The notes under the pieces: model-generated
Database searches by the model: none
What the model was told of the DNA's origin: nothing
The model's input: only the letters and a program-made list of their open reading frames with translations
Shown: positions 1,314 to 46,290 of the stretch, piece after piece
Layout: the number at the start of each line of letters is the position of its first letter
Numbering within the stretch: position 1 is the stretch's first letter
Made by a program: the position numbers and the translations under genes
Assembly (NCBI GenBank): GCA_020184695.1
Contig: JAANOX010000097.1
Span: forward strand, 1 to 64,000
Length of the DNA stretch: 64,000 bases
Source of the DNA: Histomonas meleagridis 2922-C6/04-290x
Lineage: Eukaryota; Protista; Parabasalia
Direction of reading: 5' to 3'

Positions 1314-4040
1314 ATGCCTAATAATGATGCTACCACAAATACAGAAGATAAAAATTCGAATAATCTATCAACCAGCTTGAAATTCTTAATCGAGCTTGAG
1401 AAAACTATATTCAGTTTAACCGAAGAAAACATTCAGCCTTCCATTAAAAAAGTATTAAAATTATTTGATTCAAATAATCCCTATACATTTAATACGATTA
1501 TAAGTAGCATCGTTTATAATGCATTTTCATCACCAAAGCATTTATTTGATATTTACTTAAATTTTTTAAAAACACTTCAATCTAAAGAAGAAGAAATTAA
1601 TCAAAGTGACGTTAAACTAATTTCAATTTTTGTCAAACGTATATCTACAAAGAACGCACAAGAATCATATTATTTAATCGAGAAACTAATTGAACAAAAT
1701 TTAATTGATAAAAATATCACAAAAAATATTAATTCAAAATATTTTGCTCATTATAAAATAGAAGAAGAAAACCAAAATCAAACACACAGAGCATTTGGTC
1801 CAATCGTAAAATACTTTATGGATCATTATGAAGAGCTATCAAAGAATGATTGGAAACTTCATAAGCAATTAATTAAAGAAGGAGTTAATCCTAATGAAAT
1901 TTCGAAAATAATTCGAAATGATGAAATTGAAAAACTTCAAGAAATATCATCACTAACAAATTTTGATTTTAATCAAATAATTGAACCATCACTTTATGAA
2001 AGGTGTTCATTTATTAATCAAAAGAATGTTACATTAATTGATTATGCAGCATTTTTTGGATCTGTTAAATGTTTTAAATATTTACTTATGAATGGTGCAA
2101 ATGTAATAAATACAGGTAAATATGCAGTTGCAGGTGGAAATCTTGAAATTATTCATTTGTGTGAACAAAACAATTCATCATTTGAAGATGCATATGAAAC
2201 AGCAATTAAGTTCCATCAAAATGATATCTTTATCTATCTTTATGAAAATAAATTAGAAAAAATACAATCAATACCGAAAATGTCTGAAGATAAAACTAAT
2301 GATTTAGTAAGTTTTTGTATTGAGAAAGATAATTATAAAATTTTAACATTTTTGGAAGAAAAAGGAATTAATGTTAATGCTAATAATATAAACCAATCAT
2401 CAAGAAATGGAAATTTATATCTCGTTAAATATTTCCTTAAAAATAGTCAAATTCCAAAAAATATTTTGCCATATGCTTCAGAATCAGGAAATATCGAACT
2501 TGTGAAATATGTTTTAGAACAAGAAGGAATTGATGTTAATGCAAAATATATTCATTTAAATATTTTGGAATATGTTTTAATAATTTATAATAAGTTTTAA
2601 TGATTTGGAATATGTTTTAATAATTTGAAACAGCACTTCATATAGCAGTTAAAAATAATAATATAGAAATAGTAAAATTACTTTTAGATAAAGGAATTGA
2701 TGTTAATGCAAAAACTATTCATTTGAATAATTTTGGATATGTTTTAATAATTTAGAATATGTTTTAATAATTTTATATATGTTTTAATAATTTGAAATAT
2801 GTTTAAATAACCTGAAACAGCACTTCATATAGCAGTTAGAAATAATAATATAGAAATAGTAAAATTACTTTTAGATAAAGAAATTGATGTTAATGCAAAA
2901 AATATTCATTTTTATAATTTGAAATATGTTTTAATAATTTTATATATGTTTTAATAATTTGAAATATGTTTTAATCATTTGAAACAGCACTTCATATAGC
3001 AGTTAGAAATAATAATATTGAAATAGTAAAATTACTTTTAGATAAAGAAGGAATTGATGTTAATGCAAAAAATATTCATTTGATTAATTTTATATATGTT
3101 TTAATAATTTGGAATATGTTTTAATAATTTGAAATATGTTTTAATAATTTGAAATATGTTTTAATAATTTGAAACAGCACTTCATATAGCAGTTAGAAAT
3201 AATAATATTGAAATAGTAAAATTACTTTTAGATAAAGAAGGAATTGATGTTAATGCAAAAAATATTCATTTGATTAATTTTATATATGTTTTAATAATTT
3301 GGAATATGTTTTAATAATATTATTTATGTTTTAATAATTTTGGATATTTTTTAATAATTTGGAATATGTTTTAATAATTTGAAATATGTTTTAATAATAT
3401 TATTTATGTTTTAATAATTTTGGATATTTTTTAATAATTTGGAATATGTTTTAATAATTTGAAATATGTTTTAATAATTTGAAACATCACTTCATATAGC
3501 AGTTAGAAATCATAATATTGAAATAGTAAAATTACTTTTAGAACAAAAAGGAATTGATGTCAATGCAAAAAGTATTTATTCGAATAATTTAGAATATGTT
3601 TTAATAATTTTATATATGTTTTAATAATTTGGAATATGTTTAAATAATTTGAAATATGTTTAAATAATTTGGAATATGTTTTAATAATCTGAAATATGTT
3701 TTAACAATATTTGACTGCAATTCAAATTGCACAACAAAAAGGTTACACAGAAATAGTAATTTTACTTCTTGGAAAAAGTACAAACGAAAATTCCAATTCA
3801 GACTCTTCTTCTATAAACATCAAATCTTCATTTTCAATAAGATATGGAAATAAAGCATATATTACGAATGATCAAAATCAACTCGAAGATCAAATGTTCA
3901 CAGAAAACAATAAAAAGAAAAGTATCAAAAGTGTTGATGTAAACACTCAAACATATGAAAATCATCAAAATCACAATATACATTATAACAAATATATTCA
4001 CAAAGCAAAACGAAAATACATCAATACTTTAATATTATGA
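1314..4040 (+). CDS. DUF3447-type ankyrin repeat protein; C-terminal repeats split by 17-nt+codon arrays
   Basis: ORF 1314-2600 has DYAAFFGSVKCFKYLLMNGA and AVAGGNLEIIHLCEQ. Stop-free ankyrin cassettes lie at 2630-2716, 2817-2903, 2984-3073, 3174-3263 and 3484-3573, with a terminal segment 3714-4040 (TAIQIAQQKGYTEIV). Confidence 0.75.
2550..3713 (+). repeat. 20-nt minisatellite (ATATGTTTTAATAATTT-NNN) confined to the spacers between ankyrin cassettes
   Basis: Spacers measure 80, 100, 80, 100, 220 and 140 nt, i.e. 4, 5, 4, 5, 11 and 7 units of 20 nt. Confidence 0.9.
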
Positions 4041-12746: not shown

Positions 12747-14421
12747 TCACTGTAACAAGTACAGCAGCGTATCCTGCATTGCCTTTGCTAATCCCTTTGT
12801 CAACACCAGATGTTCCTTCAACTGTTCCTTACTTTTCTCGAATATTTCTTCTTTTGGCTGATTATTTGATTCCAACTGCGCAATTATTATATCTGACAAA
12901 CCAATTCTTTCGAGGGAGTGATGCGATTTCGAAAACATGTCAATAGTTTCGATGCTATTTTCAAAGAAATTAATTCGAAGTTCGATTGCTTTCACAGATT
13001 CTTCATGAAATTCATTCAGTAATCTAATTAATGTCTCAATCATTGGTTTAACTTTAGTATATATTAAGTTCTGTGCGAGTAAAAGCGTTCGTTTTTTGTC
13101 GTCATTAATTTCAATGTTTTCGACCTCTGGGAAAACATTCATTATTTGATTCTTCTCATTTTCTAACTTTTGTTGTTCTTCAAGGATTCTATCAATGCAG
13201 AAGTTAGCAAACTTTTTCTGATTTTCTTCCGAACTTTCGCTTAATCGTTTTTGTAACCTTTCAATTGCCATGTTGCAAAATATTTTCCATTCTTCATTAT
13301 CTTTATCAAGTGCTTTGCTAAACATTTCTTTGTCTTCTGCGATTAGTGTCTTAAATAATAAGTCAAGTAATTTCATTCGTTTAGATTTAATTGTTTCTAC
13401 AATGCGCTTGGCTAATGATACAGCTTTCGCAAACGAAACATATTGTAAACGAATTTCATTAACGACGTTTGTTAATGAGTTTTTCTTGAAAACAATTTCT
13501 TTCGAGTTTATTCTTTCTCGAAGTAAATAACTTGTCTTCTCTTTAACCTCAGAGACAGAATCAGATAAATCCGAAATTTGAAGTTGGAGTTGATCGTCTT
13601 CGTTATCAAAAGGTGGATTTGAACACTTGTACTGAAAAAGTGACGATAGAGTTGATGGGGGGACTTGTGATGTGTCGACATCATCAACGTTTGCGCCACA
13701 CATGATAAGGAGAGAGACAGTACGACTATCTTTCTTTAAAAGAGCAATCTCGAGAATGCTCAGGAATTTGTCTTTAACATCTTTGGCGGGTTCTGAGAGG
13801 TTGACAATGAGATTAGGATCAGCACCTTTGCTTAGAAGAAAAGATGTCACATCAAAATGACAATACTCAATAGAGGCATATAATGGTGGAAGATGTGGTT
13901 GAATAGCAGTGAGTGGTGAGTTATATTCAATTAGTAATTTCACAAATTCAAGATGCCCAAGTGATGCGGCATGATATAAATGAAGTTGAAATATATTTAA
14001 AAAACCCCTTCAACAAACATTTGGACATTGGCTTTGTTTTCAAGTAATACTTTTCCAAATTCTAAAAGATTTTTCCGAATTGCAAGTAAAAGAGGTGTTT
14101 GACCTTTTTTCGAAAGCTCATTCACGTCGCAGCCATACTTGATTAACGTTTTAAGTGATTCTAGTTGTTGAAAAGTAACGGCTGAATGAATGAGATATTG
14201 TTTTTGACACCCTTTTTCAAGAAGAAGTGAAAGAGAATCAATACTTCCATTTTCTACGCAATGCCTTGCAAGAGTTTTAAATGAAAAAAATAAACTTTAA
14301 AAATAATAATTGAACATTAAAAAAAATATATAAACAAAAAAACAATAAAATGAACGGCTTTGTCTATGTTTCCACTGTTATTGATGTAGTTAGTAACAAA
14401 TTCCAAGTCTGTTGAGAACAT
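12747..14421 (-). CDS. Ankyrin repeat plus coiled-coil protein, interrupted by five 17-nt elements
   Basis: ATG at 14421 gives MFSTDLEFVTNYINNSGNIDKA; then 4x(17 nt+codon) at 14355-14276; then TLARHCVENGSID...KKGQTPLLLAIRKN...VEG; a 17-mer at 14005-13989; then QLHLYHAASLGHLEFVKLLIEY joining ORF 12747-13943. Confidence 0.75.
14276..14355 (-). other. Array of four 17-nt intervening elements with single-codon micro-exons
   Basis: GTTCATTTTATTGTTTT ttt GTTTATATATTTTTTTT aat GTTCAATTATTATTTTT aaa GTTTATTTTTTTCATTT aaa. Confidence 0.75.
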
Positions 14422-14619
14422 TTCGTTCCAATTTAATGTGGACCGTTAATAAGATTTATTCTTCTTGACCGTTAATGATGTGCAAGATTTATTTTGCCTT
14501 TAAACATGTAGAAAAATTTGGCTGAATATGTAAAACCTGAATCATCATCACTAAAACTTTTTTTTTTAAAATTATAATTGAATTCAAAAATCAAATTTGA
14601 AAATATTAAGAAAAAAAAT

Positions 14620-15117
14620 TTATTCGTTGCTAATGTTCAGACCGCGTAAAAAAGCTTCACATCCTTCAACAATATCATTATATGTTGCATCGAAATTTCC
14701 ACTGTACCACGGATCAGAAATGTCTCTAGAACTTCCAGCAAATTCTAGCAACTTGTGTATTTTGTGTTTTGGATCACCACCAGTAATCTTTTGCATATTT
14801 CTAATATTAAGACTATCCATTCCTATAAGATAATCATACTTTTCATAGTCTTTTTTGGTCATCTGTACAGATGTGTGAGGTACCACAGGAATACCAACTT
14901 GGCGTAATTTGTTTACTGTTCCATAATGTGGTGGATTTCCAATTTCTTCTCTACTGGTGGCAGCAGAAGCTATTTTAAATTTAGATTCCAGTCCTCTTTG
15001 TTTTACCATATGAGTGAAAACACTTTCACACATTGTGCTTCGACAAATGTTCCCATGACACACGAATAAAACTCGGATCATATTTTGGTTTGACCATTCC
15101 AGTTTTTGAATAGCCAT
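14620..15117 (-). CDS. Low-molecular-weight protein-tyrosine phosphatase, bacterial type
   Basis: VLFVCHGNICRS P-loop, DYLIGMD, DPWY; alternative start at 15081. Confidence 0.93.
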   Translation of the reverse strand: MAIQKLEWSNQNMIRVLFVCHGNICRSTMCESVFTHMVKQRGLESKFKIASAATSREEIGNPPHYGTVNKLRQVGIPVVPHTSVQMTKKDYEKYDYLIGMDSLNIRNMQKITGGDPKHKIHKLLEFAGSSRDISDPWYSGNFDATYNDIVEGCEAFLRGLNISNE

Positions 15118-21164: not shown

Positions 21165-22220
21165 TTATATGTATAGAATATTTGAAGCTGGTCAACTTCA
21201 AATGAATTCAAATAACCCAAATTTTCAAATAAACTGGCATCATGATTATAAAGAAAATTGATTTAATATTTGTTTGTTCATGATTCTATTCGTTTGAAGA
21301 TAATAAAATGAGTTTTTAAATATTTTAATATTATATTTAACATTTAATATCTGAATAATTTCCAATGTTTACACAATTGATTAATCTTATTTTTCGAGAT
21401 ATGTTTAAACATGCTAAATTTACGATCAAAATGTATAGAAAAAACCTTGAAGCAAGAAAATCGGTTTTTGAAATATATTTATCTTTTAATTATATTAATG
21501 TATTTCAATTTACAAATAATAAAATTAATTACATATATGTGTATCATATAAAAAATGAATTAAATATGAATATTTCTGAAAATGATTTTAAATTTTTATG
21601 ATTATATTTCCAATATCTCTCTATTACTTTATTTCTATTGTTTTGTTGTTAAGTTAAATGCAATTTATTTCACTTTGTCTGTTATATTCGTTTCTCTATA
21701 TTCTTTTTAAATTTTATTTTTTTTGGAATTGAATGAAATAAAATCGTTTTTAATTCAATTTTTTGCTTTATTCCTGTTTGATATTCAGTTGTTATTTAAT
21801 CATCTTAATTTTAAAACTTAGCATTAACAAATATAAAATAATGGTTATATAATAATTTAGATTGTTTAACTCTTTTTCTTTATAATTATTATTACCTCAT
21901 TTAAAGTTAACCAAACTATTTTTATCAGTAAACTCTGATTTGAAATTTCATCGCAGGTATTATTTCTTGCTACATAAAACTCCTCTAAATTGATCATGAA
22001 ATGAATTTATTTTGCTTCTTTTGTTTTTCTTCCTTTTGCTCCCATGTACACTATCGGCAAAAGTGTGTACACTAAATCTAAGCTATAGTTGAAATCATAC
22101 AAAAAAATTTTATAATATGAATTCATCGAATCAATAATAAATTGAGTATTTATCTGGTTGAATGTAATGTGATGTGAATTCGTCCGTTTTTTTTGGAATA
22201 AACGTTCACACACTGGGAAG

Positions 22221-37940: not shown

Positions 37941-38876
37941 ATGGGAGGATTGTTCAGCTCTATGGGCAAAAAGTCCCTTCCTGAAATTTATATTGATCTC
38001 GAAAATGCAAAGCCAACCACCGAGCAGGAAGAATCTCTTTATAATGAATTTCAGGAAACAATTTTTACTCCTTCAACAGATATATTAGAAAGATTTTCGC
38101 AATATCATGATGGTCAAAAGGAAGCTGCTACCGCCCTTACCAACCCATCACCAGAAACCAAAGAAGCAGCATGGAATGCAATACTTCCCAATGTCAAATT
38201 ACAAATGGAAGTTTATGATTTTGCCAAAGAGATATCAAACAAGTTTTGTCATCTCGTTGATGTTGTTATTAAACTTTCGAATGAAAAAGCAACTGGCGGT
38301 TTTGAAACTATGCCGATTACAATCAAATGTTTTGTTAGTTGCTTTGATATCATATTGAAAATGGACGAAATTAAAATCAAGCTCCCAAAGCTTATCAATG
38401 ATTTAGCATTCTTTCGGAGAAATGCGCCTTCTCATAACTCAGACGGAGATATGGACGGTTTGACAGAAAAGTCAAACATGTCAACGGTTTTTTGGGCCGC
38501 CCCAACGCCGATGCTAACCGAAGTGATCAATTCGCTTCAATCAACATATAGAGACAAGCCAGATGGGTATACAAAATTGTTAGAACTTTTAGGCACTGTG
38601 TGTGATATTTGTACAAGTATTTTAACAAATCATCACCCTGATTCTGAACCAACAAGATTATGTTTACGTTGCATTGTAGGCGCAACATTGATATATGATC
38701 ACATTTCTCCTAATGGTGCATTTGGTGTGAAGCCAACGTTTCATGTTAAAGATGCAATGACACTATTGGTTGAATATCAACCAAAGCAAATTGAATTGAT
38801 CAATGCTATCAAATACTCATCAAAGCACTTGGGCGATGAAAGTGCTGATCCCAAAATCAAAGCATTGTTCAATTAA
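37941..38876 (+). CDS. CYRI: CYRI/FAM49 (CYFIP-related Rac1 interactor, DUF1394)
   Basis: MGGLFS myristoylation-type start, LKMDEIKIKLPKLINDLAFFRR, CLRCIVGATLIYDHISPNGAF, NAIKYSSKHL. Confidence 0.85.
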   Translation: MGGLFSSMGKKSLPEIYIDLENAKPTTEQEESLYNEFQETIFTPSTDILERFSQYHDGQKEAATALTNPSPETKEAAWNAILPNVKLQMEVYDFAKEISNKFCHLVDVVIKLSNEKATGGFETMPITIKCFVSCFDIILKMDEIKIKLPKLINDLAFFRRNAPSHNSDGDMDGLTEKSNMSTVFWAAPTPMLTEVINSLQSTYRDKPDGYTKLLELLGTVCDICTSILTNHHPDSEPTRLCLRCIVGATLIYDHISPNGAFGVKPTFHVKDAMTLLVEYQPKQIELINAIKYSSKHLGDESADPKIKALFN

Positions 38877-43483: not shown

Positions 43484-46290
43484 ATGATCACCAATGGAAA
43501 CCAAGAAAACGAACCTTTGCATATGTTAAAAACTCTCCAAAATATCACATTAAACATGAACGAAAGAAGCAAGTTGAGTGATCTTCAAATGACCTTAGAT
43601 CTTTTTAATACTAATTTACCAATTTCTTTTAATTTTGTCTTTGTCATTCTGTTTATTCATCTTTTGTTTCTAGGATGAAAGACTTCAATATTTATTTTGA
43701 ATTTTTGCAGGCAGTTGAAGCAAAAGAAAAAGAATTATTTAAAAATGATTACAATATTTTTGATATTTTTTCACATATTCTTCTTATCAAAACAACGCAA
43801 GAAGCAGATTATCTTTTAGAAAAACTCTATGAGAAAAATATTATTAGTGATGAAATTCTTAAAGGCAAAATGTCATTTTATTTTGCACAATACAAAACTT
43901 TAGATGAGCTCAAAAATTGTCTTGTTCAACCTTATTCAAAACGGTTTTTTGAAAAATATGAAGAACTATCAAAGAATAATTTTGAACTTCATAAGCAACT
44001 AATTAAAGAAGGTGTTAATCCAAATGAAATTGCGAAAATGATGATTAAGAAAAACTTCAAGAAATATCATCACGAGATAATTTTAATTTTAATCAAATAA
44101 TTGAACCATCACTTTATGAACGATGTTCATTCGTTAACCAAGAAAATGTTGCATTAATTAATTATGCAGCATTTTTTGGATCAGTTAAATGTTTTAAATA
44201 TTTACTTATGAATGGTGCTAAAATAGATAATACAGGTAAATATGCAATTGCTGGAGGAAACATAGAGATAGTTCATATATGTGAACAAAATCATTCATCA
44301 TTTGAATATGCAGATTTACCAGCAATTGAATTCCATCGCTATGATATTATGCAATATGTTCATGAAAACGAAATTTTAGACACAAGATCTTGTGTATATA
44401 CTGGAAGAGAATGTATCATCCATAATAACTATGAACTTTTCACATATTTCAAAGATAAAGGAATGGAAAGCGATGATTCTTTTATTAATGAAGCAGCAAA
44501 GAATGGAAATATATTTCTTGTTCAATACTTTAATGAAGAAGTTCAAATACCAAATGAAGCTTTAGTGTCAGCTTCAAAATCAGGTAATTTAGAATTAGTT
44601 AAATATCTTATAACACAAAAGAAAATCAATGTAAATGTTAAAGATATTAAATATTTATATTTAATGTTAATTCCGTGGAAAATGGATTTATTTAAAATAA
44701 TTGATTTTTATTGTTATTGTTTAATACAGCACTTATAGTTGCATCTGAATATGGGAATATTGAATTAGTTAAATTTCTTCTCGAGCAAGAAGAAATTAAT
44801 GTTAATGCAAGAAATGTTTTTTAGTTATGTTTAAAATATCTTTCTAAAATTTGGTGTATTTTAATGATGTATGGAATTAATTGAGATCATTTAAAACAGC
44901 ACTTATTTGGGCATCACAACATAATAATATTGAGATATTCAAAATGCTTATTGAACAAAATGATATTTATGTTAACACAAGCGATATTTACCAAACTTTT
45001 TTACTGTTTATCTGAATGAATTAGATTTCATTTTGATATTTTTATACTGCAATTATGGATCATTTGAAACAGCACTTATCTATGCATCTTTAAATGACAG
45101 CATAGAAATAGTTAAATTACTTCTTGAACAAAAAGGAATTGATATTAATGCTAAAACTATTTATTTGTTTTATTTAAAATTTATTTTAATAATTTAATGT
45201 TTCTAAATAATATTTGGAAATTATTTAAAATATTTAAAACAGCACTTATGAAAGCATCTTGTAAAGGTTATACAAAAATAGCTAAATTACTTCTTGAACA
45301 AGAAGGAATTGATATTAATGCTAAAACTATTTATTTGTTTTATTTAATATTTATTATAATAATTTTGGGATATTTCATAATATTATTTGGAAATTATTTG
45401 AATTATTTTGGACAGCACTTATGTATGCATCTTGGAAAGGGAATATATATATAGTTAAATTACTTCTTGAACATAAAGGAGTTGATATTAATGTTAAAGA
45501 TATTTATTTGTTTTATTTAATATTTATTTTAATAATTTTCTATTTCAAAATAATATTTGGAAATTATTTAAATTATTTTGGACAGCACTTATGATGGCAT
45601 CTGAAAATGGTCATACAGAAATAGTTAAATTACTTCTTGAGCAAGAAGGAATTGATATTAATGCTAAAAATATTCGTTTGTTTTATTTGATATTTATTTT
45701 GATAATTTCAGATTTCAAAATAATATTTGGAAATTATTTGAATTATTTGATACAGCACTTATTTGGGCATCTTCAACTGGTTGTACAGAAATAGTTAAAT
45801 TACTTCTTGAACATAAAGGAATTGATATTAATGCTAAAAATATTCATTTGTTTAATTTATTATTTTTTTATCTAATTTTATATTTCAAAATAATGTTTGG
45901 AAATTATTTAAATTATTTGATACAGCACTTGTGTATGCATCTGAATATGGTCATACAGAAATAGTTAAAGAACTTCTTGAGCAAGAAAATTGATATTAAT
46001 GCTAATACTATTTATTTGTTTTATTTAAAATATTTTTTAATAATTTGATGTTTCTAAATAATATTTGGAATTGATTTAAATTATATGAAAAAGCACTTAT
46101 TAAATCTTCTTCAAAAGGTTATATAGAAATTGTTAAATTACTTCTTAAACAAGAAGGAATTGATATTAATGTTAAAAATATTTATTTGTTTTATATAACA
46201 TTTAATAATGTAAAATTTCAAAAAAAATTTGGAATTTTTTTCATAAGTCGTTTAACAGCAATTAAAATATGTAGTGTCATTGATCAATGA
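43484..46290 (+). pseudogene. DUF3447-type ankyrin gene, paralogous to 1314-4040; split by 17-nt+codon arrays and carrying frameshifts
   Basis: Frameshifts at ~43645 (1 nt), ~44040 (~10-nt deletion) and ~45989 (2 nt). Nine 90-nt-type cassettes start at 44726, 44896, 45069, 45239, 45412, 45582, 45752, 45922 and 46090; the terminal TAI repeat starts at 46255. The lesions could be assembly errors. Confidence 0.65.
44646..46254 (+). other. Ten spacer arrays of 17-nt intervening elements with single-codon micro-exons
   Basis: Spacers of 80, 80, 83, 80, 83, 80, 80, 80, 80 and 75 nt; seven of the first nine place a Gly codon in the penultimate micro-exon. Confidence 0.75.

What the first reader, a model, noticed from the sequence alone, without database searches (positions are those of the whole stretch)
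13989..14005. Solitary 17-nt element repairs a frameshift in the same gene
Seen: frame ...MFVEG-VF-stop. Deleting GTTTTTTAAATATATTT (17 nt, GTT...TTT, between codons) gives VEG-QLH-LYHAASLGHLEFVKLL. That has exact G-x-x-x-L-x-x-A-A ankyrin spacing and is in frame with ORF 12747-13943. Inference: the elements can occur singly, so isolated 17-mers may hide in many genes annotated as frameshifted.
Basis: partly seen in the sequence, partly recalled or inferred. Interest (0 to 1): 0.75.

Follow-up and report, generated by a model that had tools for sequence, protein, structure and literature searches.

The report
Lone 17-base insert in ankyrin gene
One ankyrin-repeat gene of the poultry parasite Histomonas meleagridis is broken by a single AT-rich 17-base insert that has to be skipped to give the protein all its relatives encode, so the odd 17-base "micro-introns" of this genome can also occur singly; I could not check its removal from RNA here.

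Summary
On the minus strand, GTTTTTTAAATATATTT (13989-14005) lies between a 99-codon and a 420-codon open frame of one ankyrin gene. Deleting it joins ...MFVEG to QLHLYHAAS....

Evidence that these 17 bases are skipped:
- **Homologues:** in 7 of 7 homologues with uninterrupted ORFs, the last residue before the insert and the first after it align to adjacent residues. A T7 read-through would add 6 residues that none of them has.
- **Paralogue:** a paralogue in the same genome carries three 17-mers in the same loop, the last at the same residue position.
- **Frame-restoring deletions:** of 32 possible 17-base deletions that restore the frame, only this one resembles the window's array elements.
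- **Position in the repeat:** it sits after the loop Gly, where the last array element sits in array-bearing genes across the genome.
- **Assembly quality:** no long ORF in the window shows a homopolymer frameshift.

The five-insert model gives 529 aa; homologues have 517-543 aa.

Not shown here: removal from RNA. Earlier notes of this scan on the same genome report RNA removal, including for this insert; I did not verify that. "Many hidden singletons" is not supported: this is the only one in 64 kb, with a few candidates genome-wide.

The parts
14356..14421 (-). Exon 1, 22 codons from ATG (MFSTDLEFVTNYINNSGNIDKA)
   Evidence: Aligns to the N-terminal region of homologues P0050 and P0092.
14279..14355 (-). 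Array of four 17-mers (all starting GTT), separated by the single codons TTT, AAT and AAA (F, N, K)
   Evidence: Homologues P0092 and P0065 have exactly 3 residues (FGE, YGK) between the stretches that align to exon 1 and to the next exon.
14006..14278 (-). Exon of 91 codons (KTLARHCVENG ... ENKANVQMFVEG) with ankyrin repeats
   Evidence: Pfam Ank_2 E = 1e-11. Alignment scores of 71-203 to homologues.
13989..14005 (-). The lone 17-nt insert GTTTTTTAAATATATTT, in phase 0 between the codons GGG (Gly) and CAA (Gln). It contains the in-frame TAA.
   Evidence: At protein level the boundaries are fixed only to about 1 nt: a shift of -1 also gives E-G-Q.
12747..13988 (-). Last exon: 413 codons plus stop. 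One and a half ankyrin repeats followed by a conserved C-terminal domain of about 330 aa with no Pfam family.
   Evidence: 39% identical to P0002 and 23-33% identical to P0013, P0016, P0019, P0050 and others over nearly its whole length.

Best explanation
The 17 bases at 13989-14005 (minus strand) are a solitary member of the 17-nt AT-rich intervening elements that interrupt ankyrin genes of Histomonas meleagridis. They are not part of the protein. The functional message joins GGG (Gly) directly to CAA (Gln). With the four-element array upstream this gives one 529-aa protein: ankyrin repeats followed by a conserved C-terminal domain. The most likely route is excision from the pre-mRNA as an ultra-short intron. 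Its 5' end (GTTTTT) fits the degenerate 5' splice motif GTWYWD of the short 'type B' introns of Trichomonas. It has no branch-site/AG 3' motif, so the 3' cut would be set by distance (17 nt) and a U-rich end. Shown here: the insert, its position, its likeness to the array elements, and that only skipping it reproduces the conserved protein. Inferred: that the skipping happens at RNA level, and by what machinery.
For: (1) Exon-by-exon alignment to seven homologues with uninterrupted ORFs (P0050, P0019, P0092, P0136, P0034, P0113, P0065). The last residue before the insert and the first after it align to adjacent residues in all seven, for example ...MAIDG|KTVLYHAA and ...LNVKG|QNMLSHAA.
(2) The paralogue on contig C268 (L002) has three 17-mers, all starting GTTTATTTT, separated by the single codons N and K in the same loop. 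The third lies at the same residue position as the lone insert. The two loops are equal in length (19 residues) only if every 17-mer is removed.
(3) It is the only one of 32 frame-restoring 17-nt deletions with a positive element score, which falls in the top 0.28% of window 17-mers.
(4) The site is Gly|x, at Ank_2 profile position 30. 35 of 150 listed Ank_2 matches genome-wide start exactly there. A genome pattern for Gly-codon + RWT..TTT + x-T-A-L with a free spacer of 5-17 gave 213 matches against 0 control matches, and all 100 listed matches are consistent with a 17-nt element. With an Asn codon before Gly, 22 of 36 matches have L = 17 and no other length has more than 4.
(5) Closer relatives known only from metagenomes (P0177, P0179, and P0013, P0016, P0002) have a T-rich insert, or an ORF that starts, at this same loop. 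Contigs of one 90% cluster read the downstream exon in all three frames. The interruption is therefore old, yet both flanks have stayed open and conserved.
(6) The model gives 529 aa; homologues have 517-543 aa.
(7) No frameshift at any of 85 homopolymer runs of at least 6 bases in 20 intact ORFs of at least 300 codons in the window.
(8) Earlier scan note s1-298679 says this insert is missing from RNA. I did not verify that.
Against: Three word-index protein searches found no product spanning the junction. The published assemblies differ by 21,822 raw indels, of which the authors accepted only 2 as real, so homopolymer errors do exist in these assemblies, and the insert contains a T6 run. The element score (6.3 bits) is at the bottom of the range of the training elements. 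The insert lacks AG and any trichomonad branch-site motif, so no known splicing rule predicts its removal. No significant RNA structure was found (z = 0.07). Protein comparison fixes the boundaries only to about 1 nt.
Confidence: 0.8

Rival explanations
1. Assembly error or real in-frame insertion. The T6 run is really T7, so the frame runs on as EGVFLNIFQLH and the 18 bases are translated as a six-residue loop insertion.
For: The hybrid ONT/Illumina assemblies of this species differ at 21,822 raw indel sites, nearly all judged to be errors. The insert holds a T6 run. Gene callers read a T-rich insert through in frame in one relative's contig (P0177).
Against: None of seven uninterrupted homologues has any residue at this point. 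The paralogue's loop has the same length only if the insert is absent. Other contigs of the relative's cluster put the downstream exon in the other two frames, so that insert is not consistently in frame. There are 0 frameshifts at 85 coding homopolymer runs in the window. The Pfam match does not extend into the RGFLNIF stretch.
Confidence: 0.06
2. Pseudogene or split gene. The insert is a true disabling lesion. Only a 125-aa ankyrin fragment is made, or nothing, and the downstream ORF is a relic or a separate gene.
For: No transcript-derived protein of this gene is in the databases searched. The public annotation has no model for the ankyrin part.
Against: The 413 downstream codons are free of stops in a genome of about 30% G+C and are 23-39% identical to relatives over their full length. 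The upstream exon is equally conserved. Homologues carry both parts in one protein of 517-543 aa. The only 'lesions' are five inserts of exactly 17 nt at loop positions. Relatives carry an interruption at the same loop.
Confidence: 0.08
3. Recoding during translation or transcription. Either a -1 slip of tRNA-Phe on the T6 run before the TAA stop, or polymerase slippage, which would give EGVFLNIFQLH; or a 17-nt ribosomal hop, which would give EG-QLH.
For: The downstream frame is the -1 frame. TTT TTT followed by a stop codon is a plausible slippery site (sequence). A hop would give the conserved protein.
Against: The slip product has six residues that no homologue has. There are no matching take-off and landing codons for a hop (GGG and CAA). 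The four array elements in the same gene have other sequences and leave single codons, so each would need its own event. There is no stimulatory structure. Earlier scan notes report the elements missing from RNA, which I did not verify.
Confidence: 0.05

Closest known systems
Ultra-short spliceosomal introns of mikrocytids (16-17 nt; PMC10245619) and Stentor coeruleus (15-16 nt)
   Same: Same extreme, almost invariant length. AT-rich. They interrupt coding sequence and are invisible to standard gene finders.
   Different: Those introns are described as spliceosomal with highly conserved sequences. This insert ends in TTT, has no AG, and shares only a loose R-T-T...T-T-T pattern with other elements. 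In this genome such inserts also stand in tandem around single codons.
Type B short introns of Trichomonas vaginalis and T. stableri (23-28 nt; PMC12316389)
   Same: Same phylum (Parabasalia). The 5' hexamer GTTTTT fits the published degenerate 5' motif GTWYWD, as do the other eight GTT-type elements of this gene and its paralogue. The interior is T-rich.
   Different: The insert is 17 nt, not 23-28 nt. It lacks the fused branch-site/3' motif TCTAACH(1-2)AACAG and the terminal AG that all 63 validated T. vaginalis introns have.
17-nt element arrays in H. meleagridis ankyrin genes
   Same: Length 17, purine-T-T start, TTT end, phase 0, ankyrin loop position Gly|x. Found in a gene that also has a four-element array.
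   Different: It stands alone between exons of 91 and 413 codons, instead of being flanked by one-codon exons.
Translational bypass elements (T4 gene 60; mitochondrial byps of Magnusiomyces), from my own knowledge
   Same: A short non-coding insert inside an ORF that is absent from the protein.
   Different: Those elements stay in the mRNA, are 27-55 nt long, and need matching take-off and landing codons. There are none here.

Membership tests
H. meleagridis 17-nt intervening elements (class defined by this scan) | Exactly 17 nt, between codons, starting R-W-T and ending T-T-T (or TTH) | tested here: met
   GTT...TTT, 17 nt, phase 0. The matrix score is positive only in this register.
H. meleagridis 17-nt intervening elements (class defined by this scan) | Sits at a canonical ankyrin loop position, and removal restores the repeat | tested here: met
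   Between the loop Gly and Ank position 3 / Ank_2 position 30. This is the site of the last array element. There are 0 residues between the flanks in 7 homologues.
H. meleagridis 17-nt intervening elements (class defined by this scan) | Absent from mature RNA | not testable with these tools
No junction-spanning protein is in the databases.
Canonical U2-type spliceosomal intron | GT at the 5' end and AG at the 3' end | tested here: not met
   The 5' GT is present. The 3' end is TTT, and there is no AG anywhere in the 17 nt or the next 12 nt.
Trichomonad type B intron (PMC12316389) | 5' motif GTWYWD | tested here: met
   GTTTTT fits. The other elements of this gene and its paralogue (GTTCAT, GTTTAT, GTTCAA) fit too. 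In T-rich sequence this is a weak test.
Trichomonad type B intron (PMC12316389) | Length 23-28 nt with the 3' motif TCTAACH(1-2)AACAG | tested here: not met
   The insert is 17 nt and has no CTAA and no AG.
Programmed -1 ribosomal frameshift | Slippery site plus a downstream stimulatory structure; the product contains the residues that were read through | tested here: inconclusive
   A T6 run before TAA could slip. There is no significant structure (z = 0.07). The six extra residues are absent from all homologues.
Translational bypass (gene 60 / byp type) | Matching take-off and landing codons flanking the gap | tested here: not met
   The take-off codon would be GGG. The codon after the gap is CAA, and there is no GGN nearby downstream.
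Ankyrin-repeat protein (Pfam Ank, Ank_2) | Repeats score above Pfam cut-offs | tested here: met
   Upstream exon: Ank_2 45.7 bits against a cut-off of 27.3. Downstream exon start: Ank 34.7 bits against 21.1.

The most novel reading that the evidence does not exclude
H. meleagridis has an RNA excision system that measures out 17-nt U-rich pieces without a 3' AG. It could be a strongly altered spliceosome or a separate machinery. This lone insert between two long exons would show that one element is a self-sufficient unit, needing neither neighbouring elements nor one-codon exons. If so, the class could sit in any gene, and the gene catalogue of this parasite and its relatives is systematically wrong wherever such elements occur.
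Probability: 0.4. Interest if true: 0.9.

Novelty: new variant of a known kind. Interest (0 to 1): 0.74.

Why it matters
If the insert is cut from the RNA, it is an intron at the lower length limit known for any eukaryote, it lacks the AG that every described trichomonad intron has, and it works as a single unit. That gives a simple substrate, one element between two long exons, for RT-PCR, minigene and mutagenesis work on how such pieces are recognised; the tandem arrays are much harder to analyse. It also shows a practical problem. The published annotation states that introns are scarce and that no gene has more than one. It has no model for the ankyrin part of this gene and fuses the gene's tail to the neighbouring phosphatase gene. 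Protein catalogues and proteomics databases for this poultry pathogen are therefore wrong at such loci.

Tried and rejected
- **RNA evidence.** Word-index searches with the whole last exon, the upstream exon and the first 130 aa of the last exon found no junction-spanning product.
- **DNA of orthologues.** A metagenome scan returned only generic ankyrin loci. A scan of prokaryotic genomes returned one bacterial ankyrin gene.
- **Bulk genome sampling for an unbiased count of singletons.** One call was wasted on a contig that is only 33 kb long. I did not try to extract genome sequence by pattern walking.
- **ORF-pair scan of the window.** With a minimum of 50 codons it was too noisy. With 40 flanking codons the length-control version was dominated by the arrays.
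- **Candidate second singleton at 38080-38096.** Rejected, because the CYRI domain continues in one frame across it.
- **Requiring a non-T base before the Gly codon** does not pick out singletons. Those hits are arrays whose third element ends in TTC or TTA.
- **RNA structure and Rfam.** Neither gave anything.
All comparisons were made exon by exon.

Full report
**What the window is.** The window is AT-rich (about 30% G+C) and gene-dense, with long uninterrupted ORFs. The last exon of the gene in question matches an NCBI protein of Histomonas meleagridis, identical over the shared part (P0001). The assembly holding the window has 43,133,364 bases in 281 contigs. Those are the figures published for the attenuated strain (PMC8529796).

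**The observation.**
- On the minus strand, an open frame of 99 codons (14296-14000) reads ...LLENKANVQMFVEG-VF-stop.
- A 420-codon open frame (14009-12750) follows, in the frame reached by deleting 3n+2 bases.
- The 17 bases at 13989-14005 read GTTTTTTAAATATATTT. They lie between the codons GGG and CAA.
- Removing them gives VEG|QLHLYHAASLGHLEFVKLL.
- Both flanks are ankyrin repeats (Pfam). The first residue after the insert falls on Ank position 3 and Ank_2 position 30, which is the residue right after the loop glycine.

**Chance.**
- I parsed the tandem arrays elsewhere in the window (2550-3170 and 45159-45918, plus strand). They gave 33 elements, 20 of them unique. Their consensus is ATTTATTTAAATAATTT, with a purine at position 1, T at 2-3, A at 14 and TTT at 15-17.
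- There are 32 possible 17-nt deletions that restore the frame at this break. Only the proposed register scores positive: 6.3 bits, in the top 0.28% of all window 17-mers.
- It is the only place in the 64 kb where removing an element-like 17-mer joins two open frames of at least 90 codons.
- With 60 codons one more site appears, at 38080. It is a false positive, because a CYRI domain runs through it in one frame.

**Comparative evidence, which is the main result.** I searched the 413-aa last exon against 1.84 billion representative proteins. This found full-length relatives, all from unnamed metagenome or Logan assemblies.
- Seven have a continuous ORF across the equivalent point: P0050, P0019, P0092, P0136, P0034, P0113 and P0065 (444-543 aa).
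- I aligned the upstream exon and the downstream exon separately to each. In all seven, the last residue before the insert and the first after it fall on adjacent residues, with zero residues between. Examples are ...AIDG|KTVLYHAA and ...NVKG|QNMLSHAA.
- A read-through with one extra T would put six residues (VFLNIF) where no relative has any.
- The same test on the upstream array gives three residues in P0092 (FGE) and in P0065 (YGK), where this gene keeps the three single codons F, N and K.
- The five-insert gene model codes for 529 aa, within the 517-543 aa range of the full-length relatives.
Every comparison was made exon by exon.

**The paralogue in the same genome.** Contig C268 (L002) holds a 22%-identical paralogue with the same architecture.
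- In the same loop it has GTTTATTTTTAATTTCT, then codon N, then GTTTATTTTATTTTTTT, then codon K, then GTTTATTTTTTACATTT.
- With all 17-mers removed, both genes have 19 residues from the 'GA' of the loop to the 'AS' of the next helix.
- The lone insert sits at the residue position of the paralogue's third element.
- The lone insert therefore looks like the survivor of an array, or the one member gained at an array site.

**Closer relatives.**
- P0013, P0016 and P0002 (30-39% identical) are ORF calls that begin at or just after this point.
- Longer members of their 90% clusters (P0177, P0179) read 12-15 F/L/I/Y-rich residues between the aligned flanks.
- Shorter members (P0174-P0176) run from the upstream exon into the two other frames of the downstream exon.
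- So relatives also carry a T-rich interruption in this loop, and its length is unstable between contigs.
- The interruption is old, yet both flanks have stayed open and conserved. That argues against both a pseudogene and a local assembly slip.

**The class of elements, genome-wide.** All pattern searches below ran on the window's own genome.

| Pattern | Matches | Control | Result |
|---|---|---|---|
| Gly codon + RWT...TTT + x-T-A-L, spacer free (5-17) | 213 | 0 | all 100 listed matches consistent with a 17-nt element |
| Asn codon before Gly | 36 | 9 | 22 of 36 have L = 17; no other length has more than 4 |
| D-x-x-G before the element | 141 | 74 | 22 of the 100 listed have L = 17; other lengths 8-16 each |
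| Strict lone-element pattern D-x-N-G\|17\|x-T | 9 | 5 | 2 element-like hits (C81:289850, C230:45514) |

- In addition, 35 of 150 listed Ank_2 matches start at profile position 30. That is where the exon after the last array element starts.
- At C230 an Ank_2 match inside a 495-aa open frame begins on the first base after the candidate 17-mer.
- Lone elements therefore exist beyond this window, but they look far rarer than array members.

**Assembly error.** The genome paper reports 21,822 raw indel differences between the two strain assemblies, of which only 2 survived read validation. So indel errors are present in these assemblies. In this window, 20 intact ORFs of at least 300 codons (35 kb) hold 85 homopolymer runs of at least 6 bases, none of them broken. 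That sample is selected for being intact, so it gives only a rough bound of about 3.5% per run. Together with the homologue spacing, I put this rival at about 6%.

**Mechanism.**
- I found no RNA evidence myself.
- Earlier notes of this scan on the same genome state that such inserts, this one included, are missing from RNA assemblies. I treat that as an unverified lead.
- The sequence itself gives one hint. The 5' hexamer GTTTTT fits the degenerate 5' splice motif GTWYWD of Trichomonas type B introns, as do those of the eight other GTT-type elements of this gene and its paralogue. The fused branch-site/AG motif of those introns is absent, and the length is 17 nt rather than 23-28 nt.
- There is no significant RNA fold and no Rfam match.
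- My reading is excision from the pre-mRNA, probably by a spliceosome-derived process in which the 3' cut is set by distance and a U-rich end. Excision is inferred, and the machinery is unknown.

**Literature.** Searches for Histomonas with intron or ankyrin, for parabasalid short or non-canonical introns, for Dientamoeba introns, and for 17-nt introns found no description of these elements. The nearest published cases are:
- the 16-17-nt introns of mikrocytids (PMC10245619);
- the 15-nt introns of Stentor;
- the 23-28-nt type B introns of Trichomonas (PMC12316389).

The genome paper states that introns are scarce and that no gene has more than one.

**Verdict.** The reading 'a solitary element that must be skipped' is strongly supported by protein comparison, at about 0.8. 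Removal at RNA level is still to be shown. 'Many hidden singletons' is not shown.

Noticed in passing
window 12747-15117 (minus strand): The public protein P0001 ('low molecular weight phosphotyrosine protein phosphatase', 481 aa) is a mis-joined model. It fuses the phosphatase gene (14620-15117) to the last exon of the ankyrin gene from ...GADPNLIV onward, and skips all the ankyrin exons and the five inserts.
   Followed up: yes
L002 about 2400-2520 (minus strand; G000:C268): The paralogue has a three-element array in the loop where this gene has the lone insert. Its first element ends in TCT, not TTT.
   Followed up: yes
Genome-wide, (e.g. G000:C2:402516-402550): When the base before the loop Gly codon is not T, the upstream neighbour is still an array element, ending ...AATATTC or ...AATATTA. 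The 3' end of the elements is therefore TTH rather than strictly TTT.
   Followed up: partly
Proteins P0174-P0177 (one 90% cluster, ENA metagenomes): Contigs of an uncultured relative read the exon after this loop in all three frames. From the translations I inferred T-rich inserts of 39, 40 and 41 nt. The cause is either length variation or assembly errors in T runs inside the insert.
   Followed up: partly
G000:C230:45519-45535 (minus strand) and G000:C81:289862-289878: Two further candidate lone 17-mers after a contiguous D-x-N-G. At C230 an Ank_2 match inside a 495-aa open frame starts on the next base. I did not examine the flanking sequence.
   Followed up: partly
window 43633-44735 (plus strand): Open frames of 155 and 229 codons overlap by 49 nt, in the frame relation that a 17-nt deletion would fix. 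This is upstream of the array-bearing ankyrin gene at 44.1-46.3 kb. No 17-mer with RTT...TTT ends fits there, so it may be two genes or a different kind of break.
   Followed up: partly
window 2550-3713 (plus strand): An ankyrin gene whose loop arrays have expanded to as many as 10 near-identical units of 17+3 nt (ATATGTTTTAATAATTT plus GGA, GAA or TAT). It looks like a minisatellite.
   Followed up: no
window 12750-13700 (minus strand): The C-terminal domain of this protein, about 330 aa, has no Pfam family. It is conserved at 23-39% identity in about a dozen proteins of 370-543 aa from unnamed metagenome and Logan assemblies. It appears to be a lineage-specific domain attached to a short ankyrin module.
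   Followed up: partly
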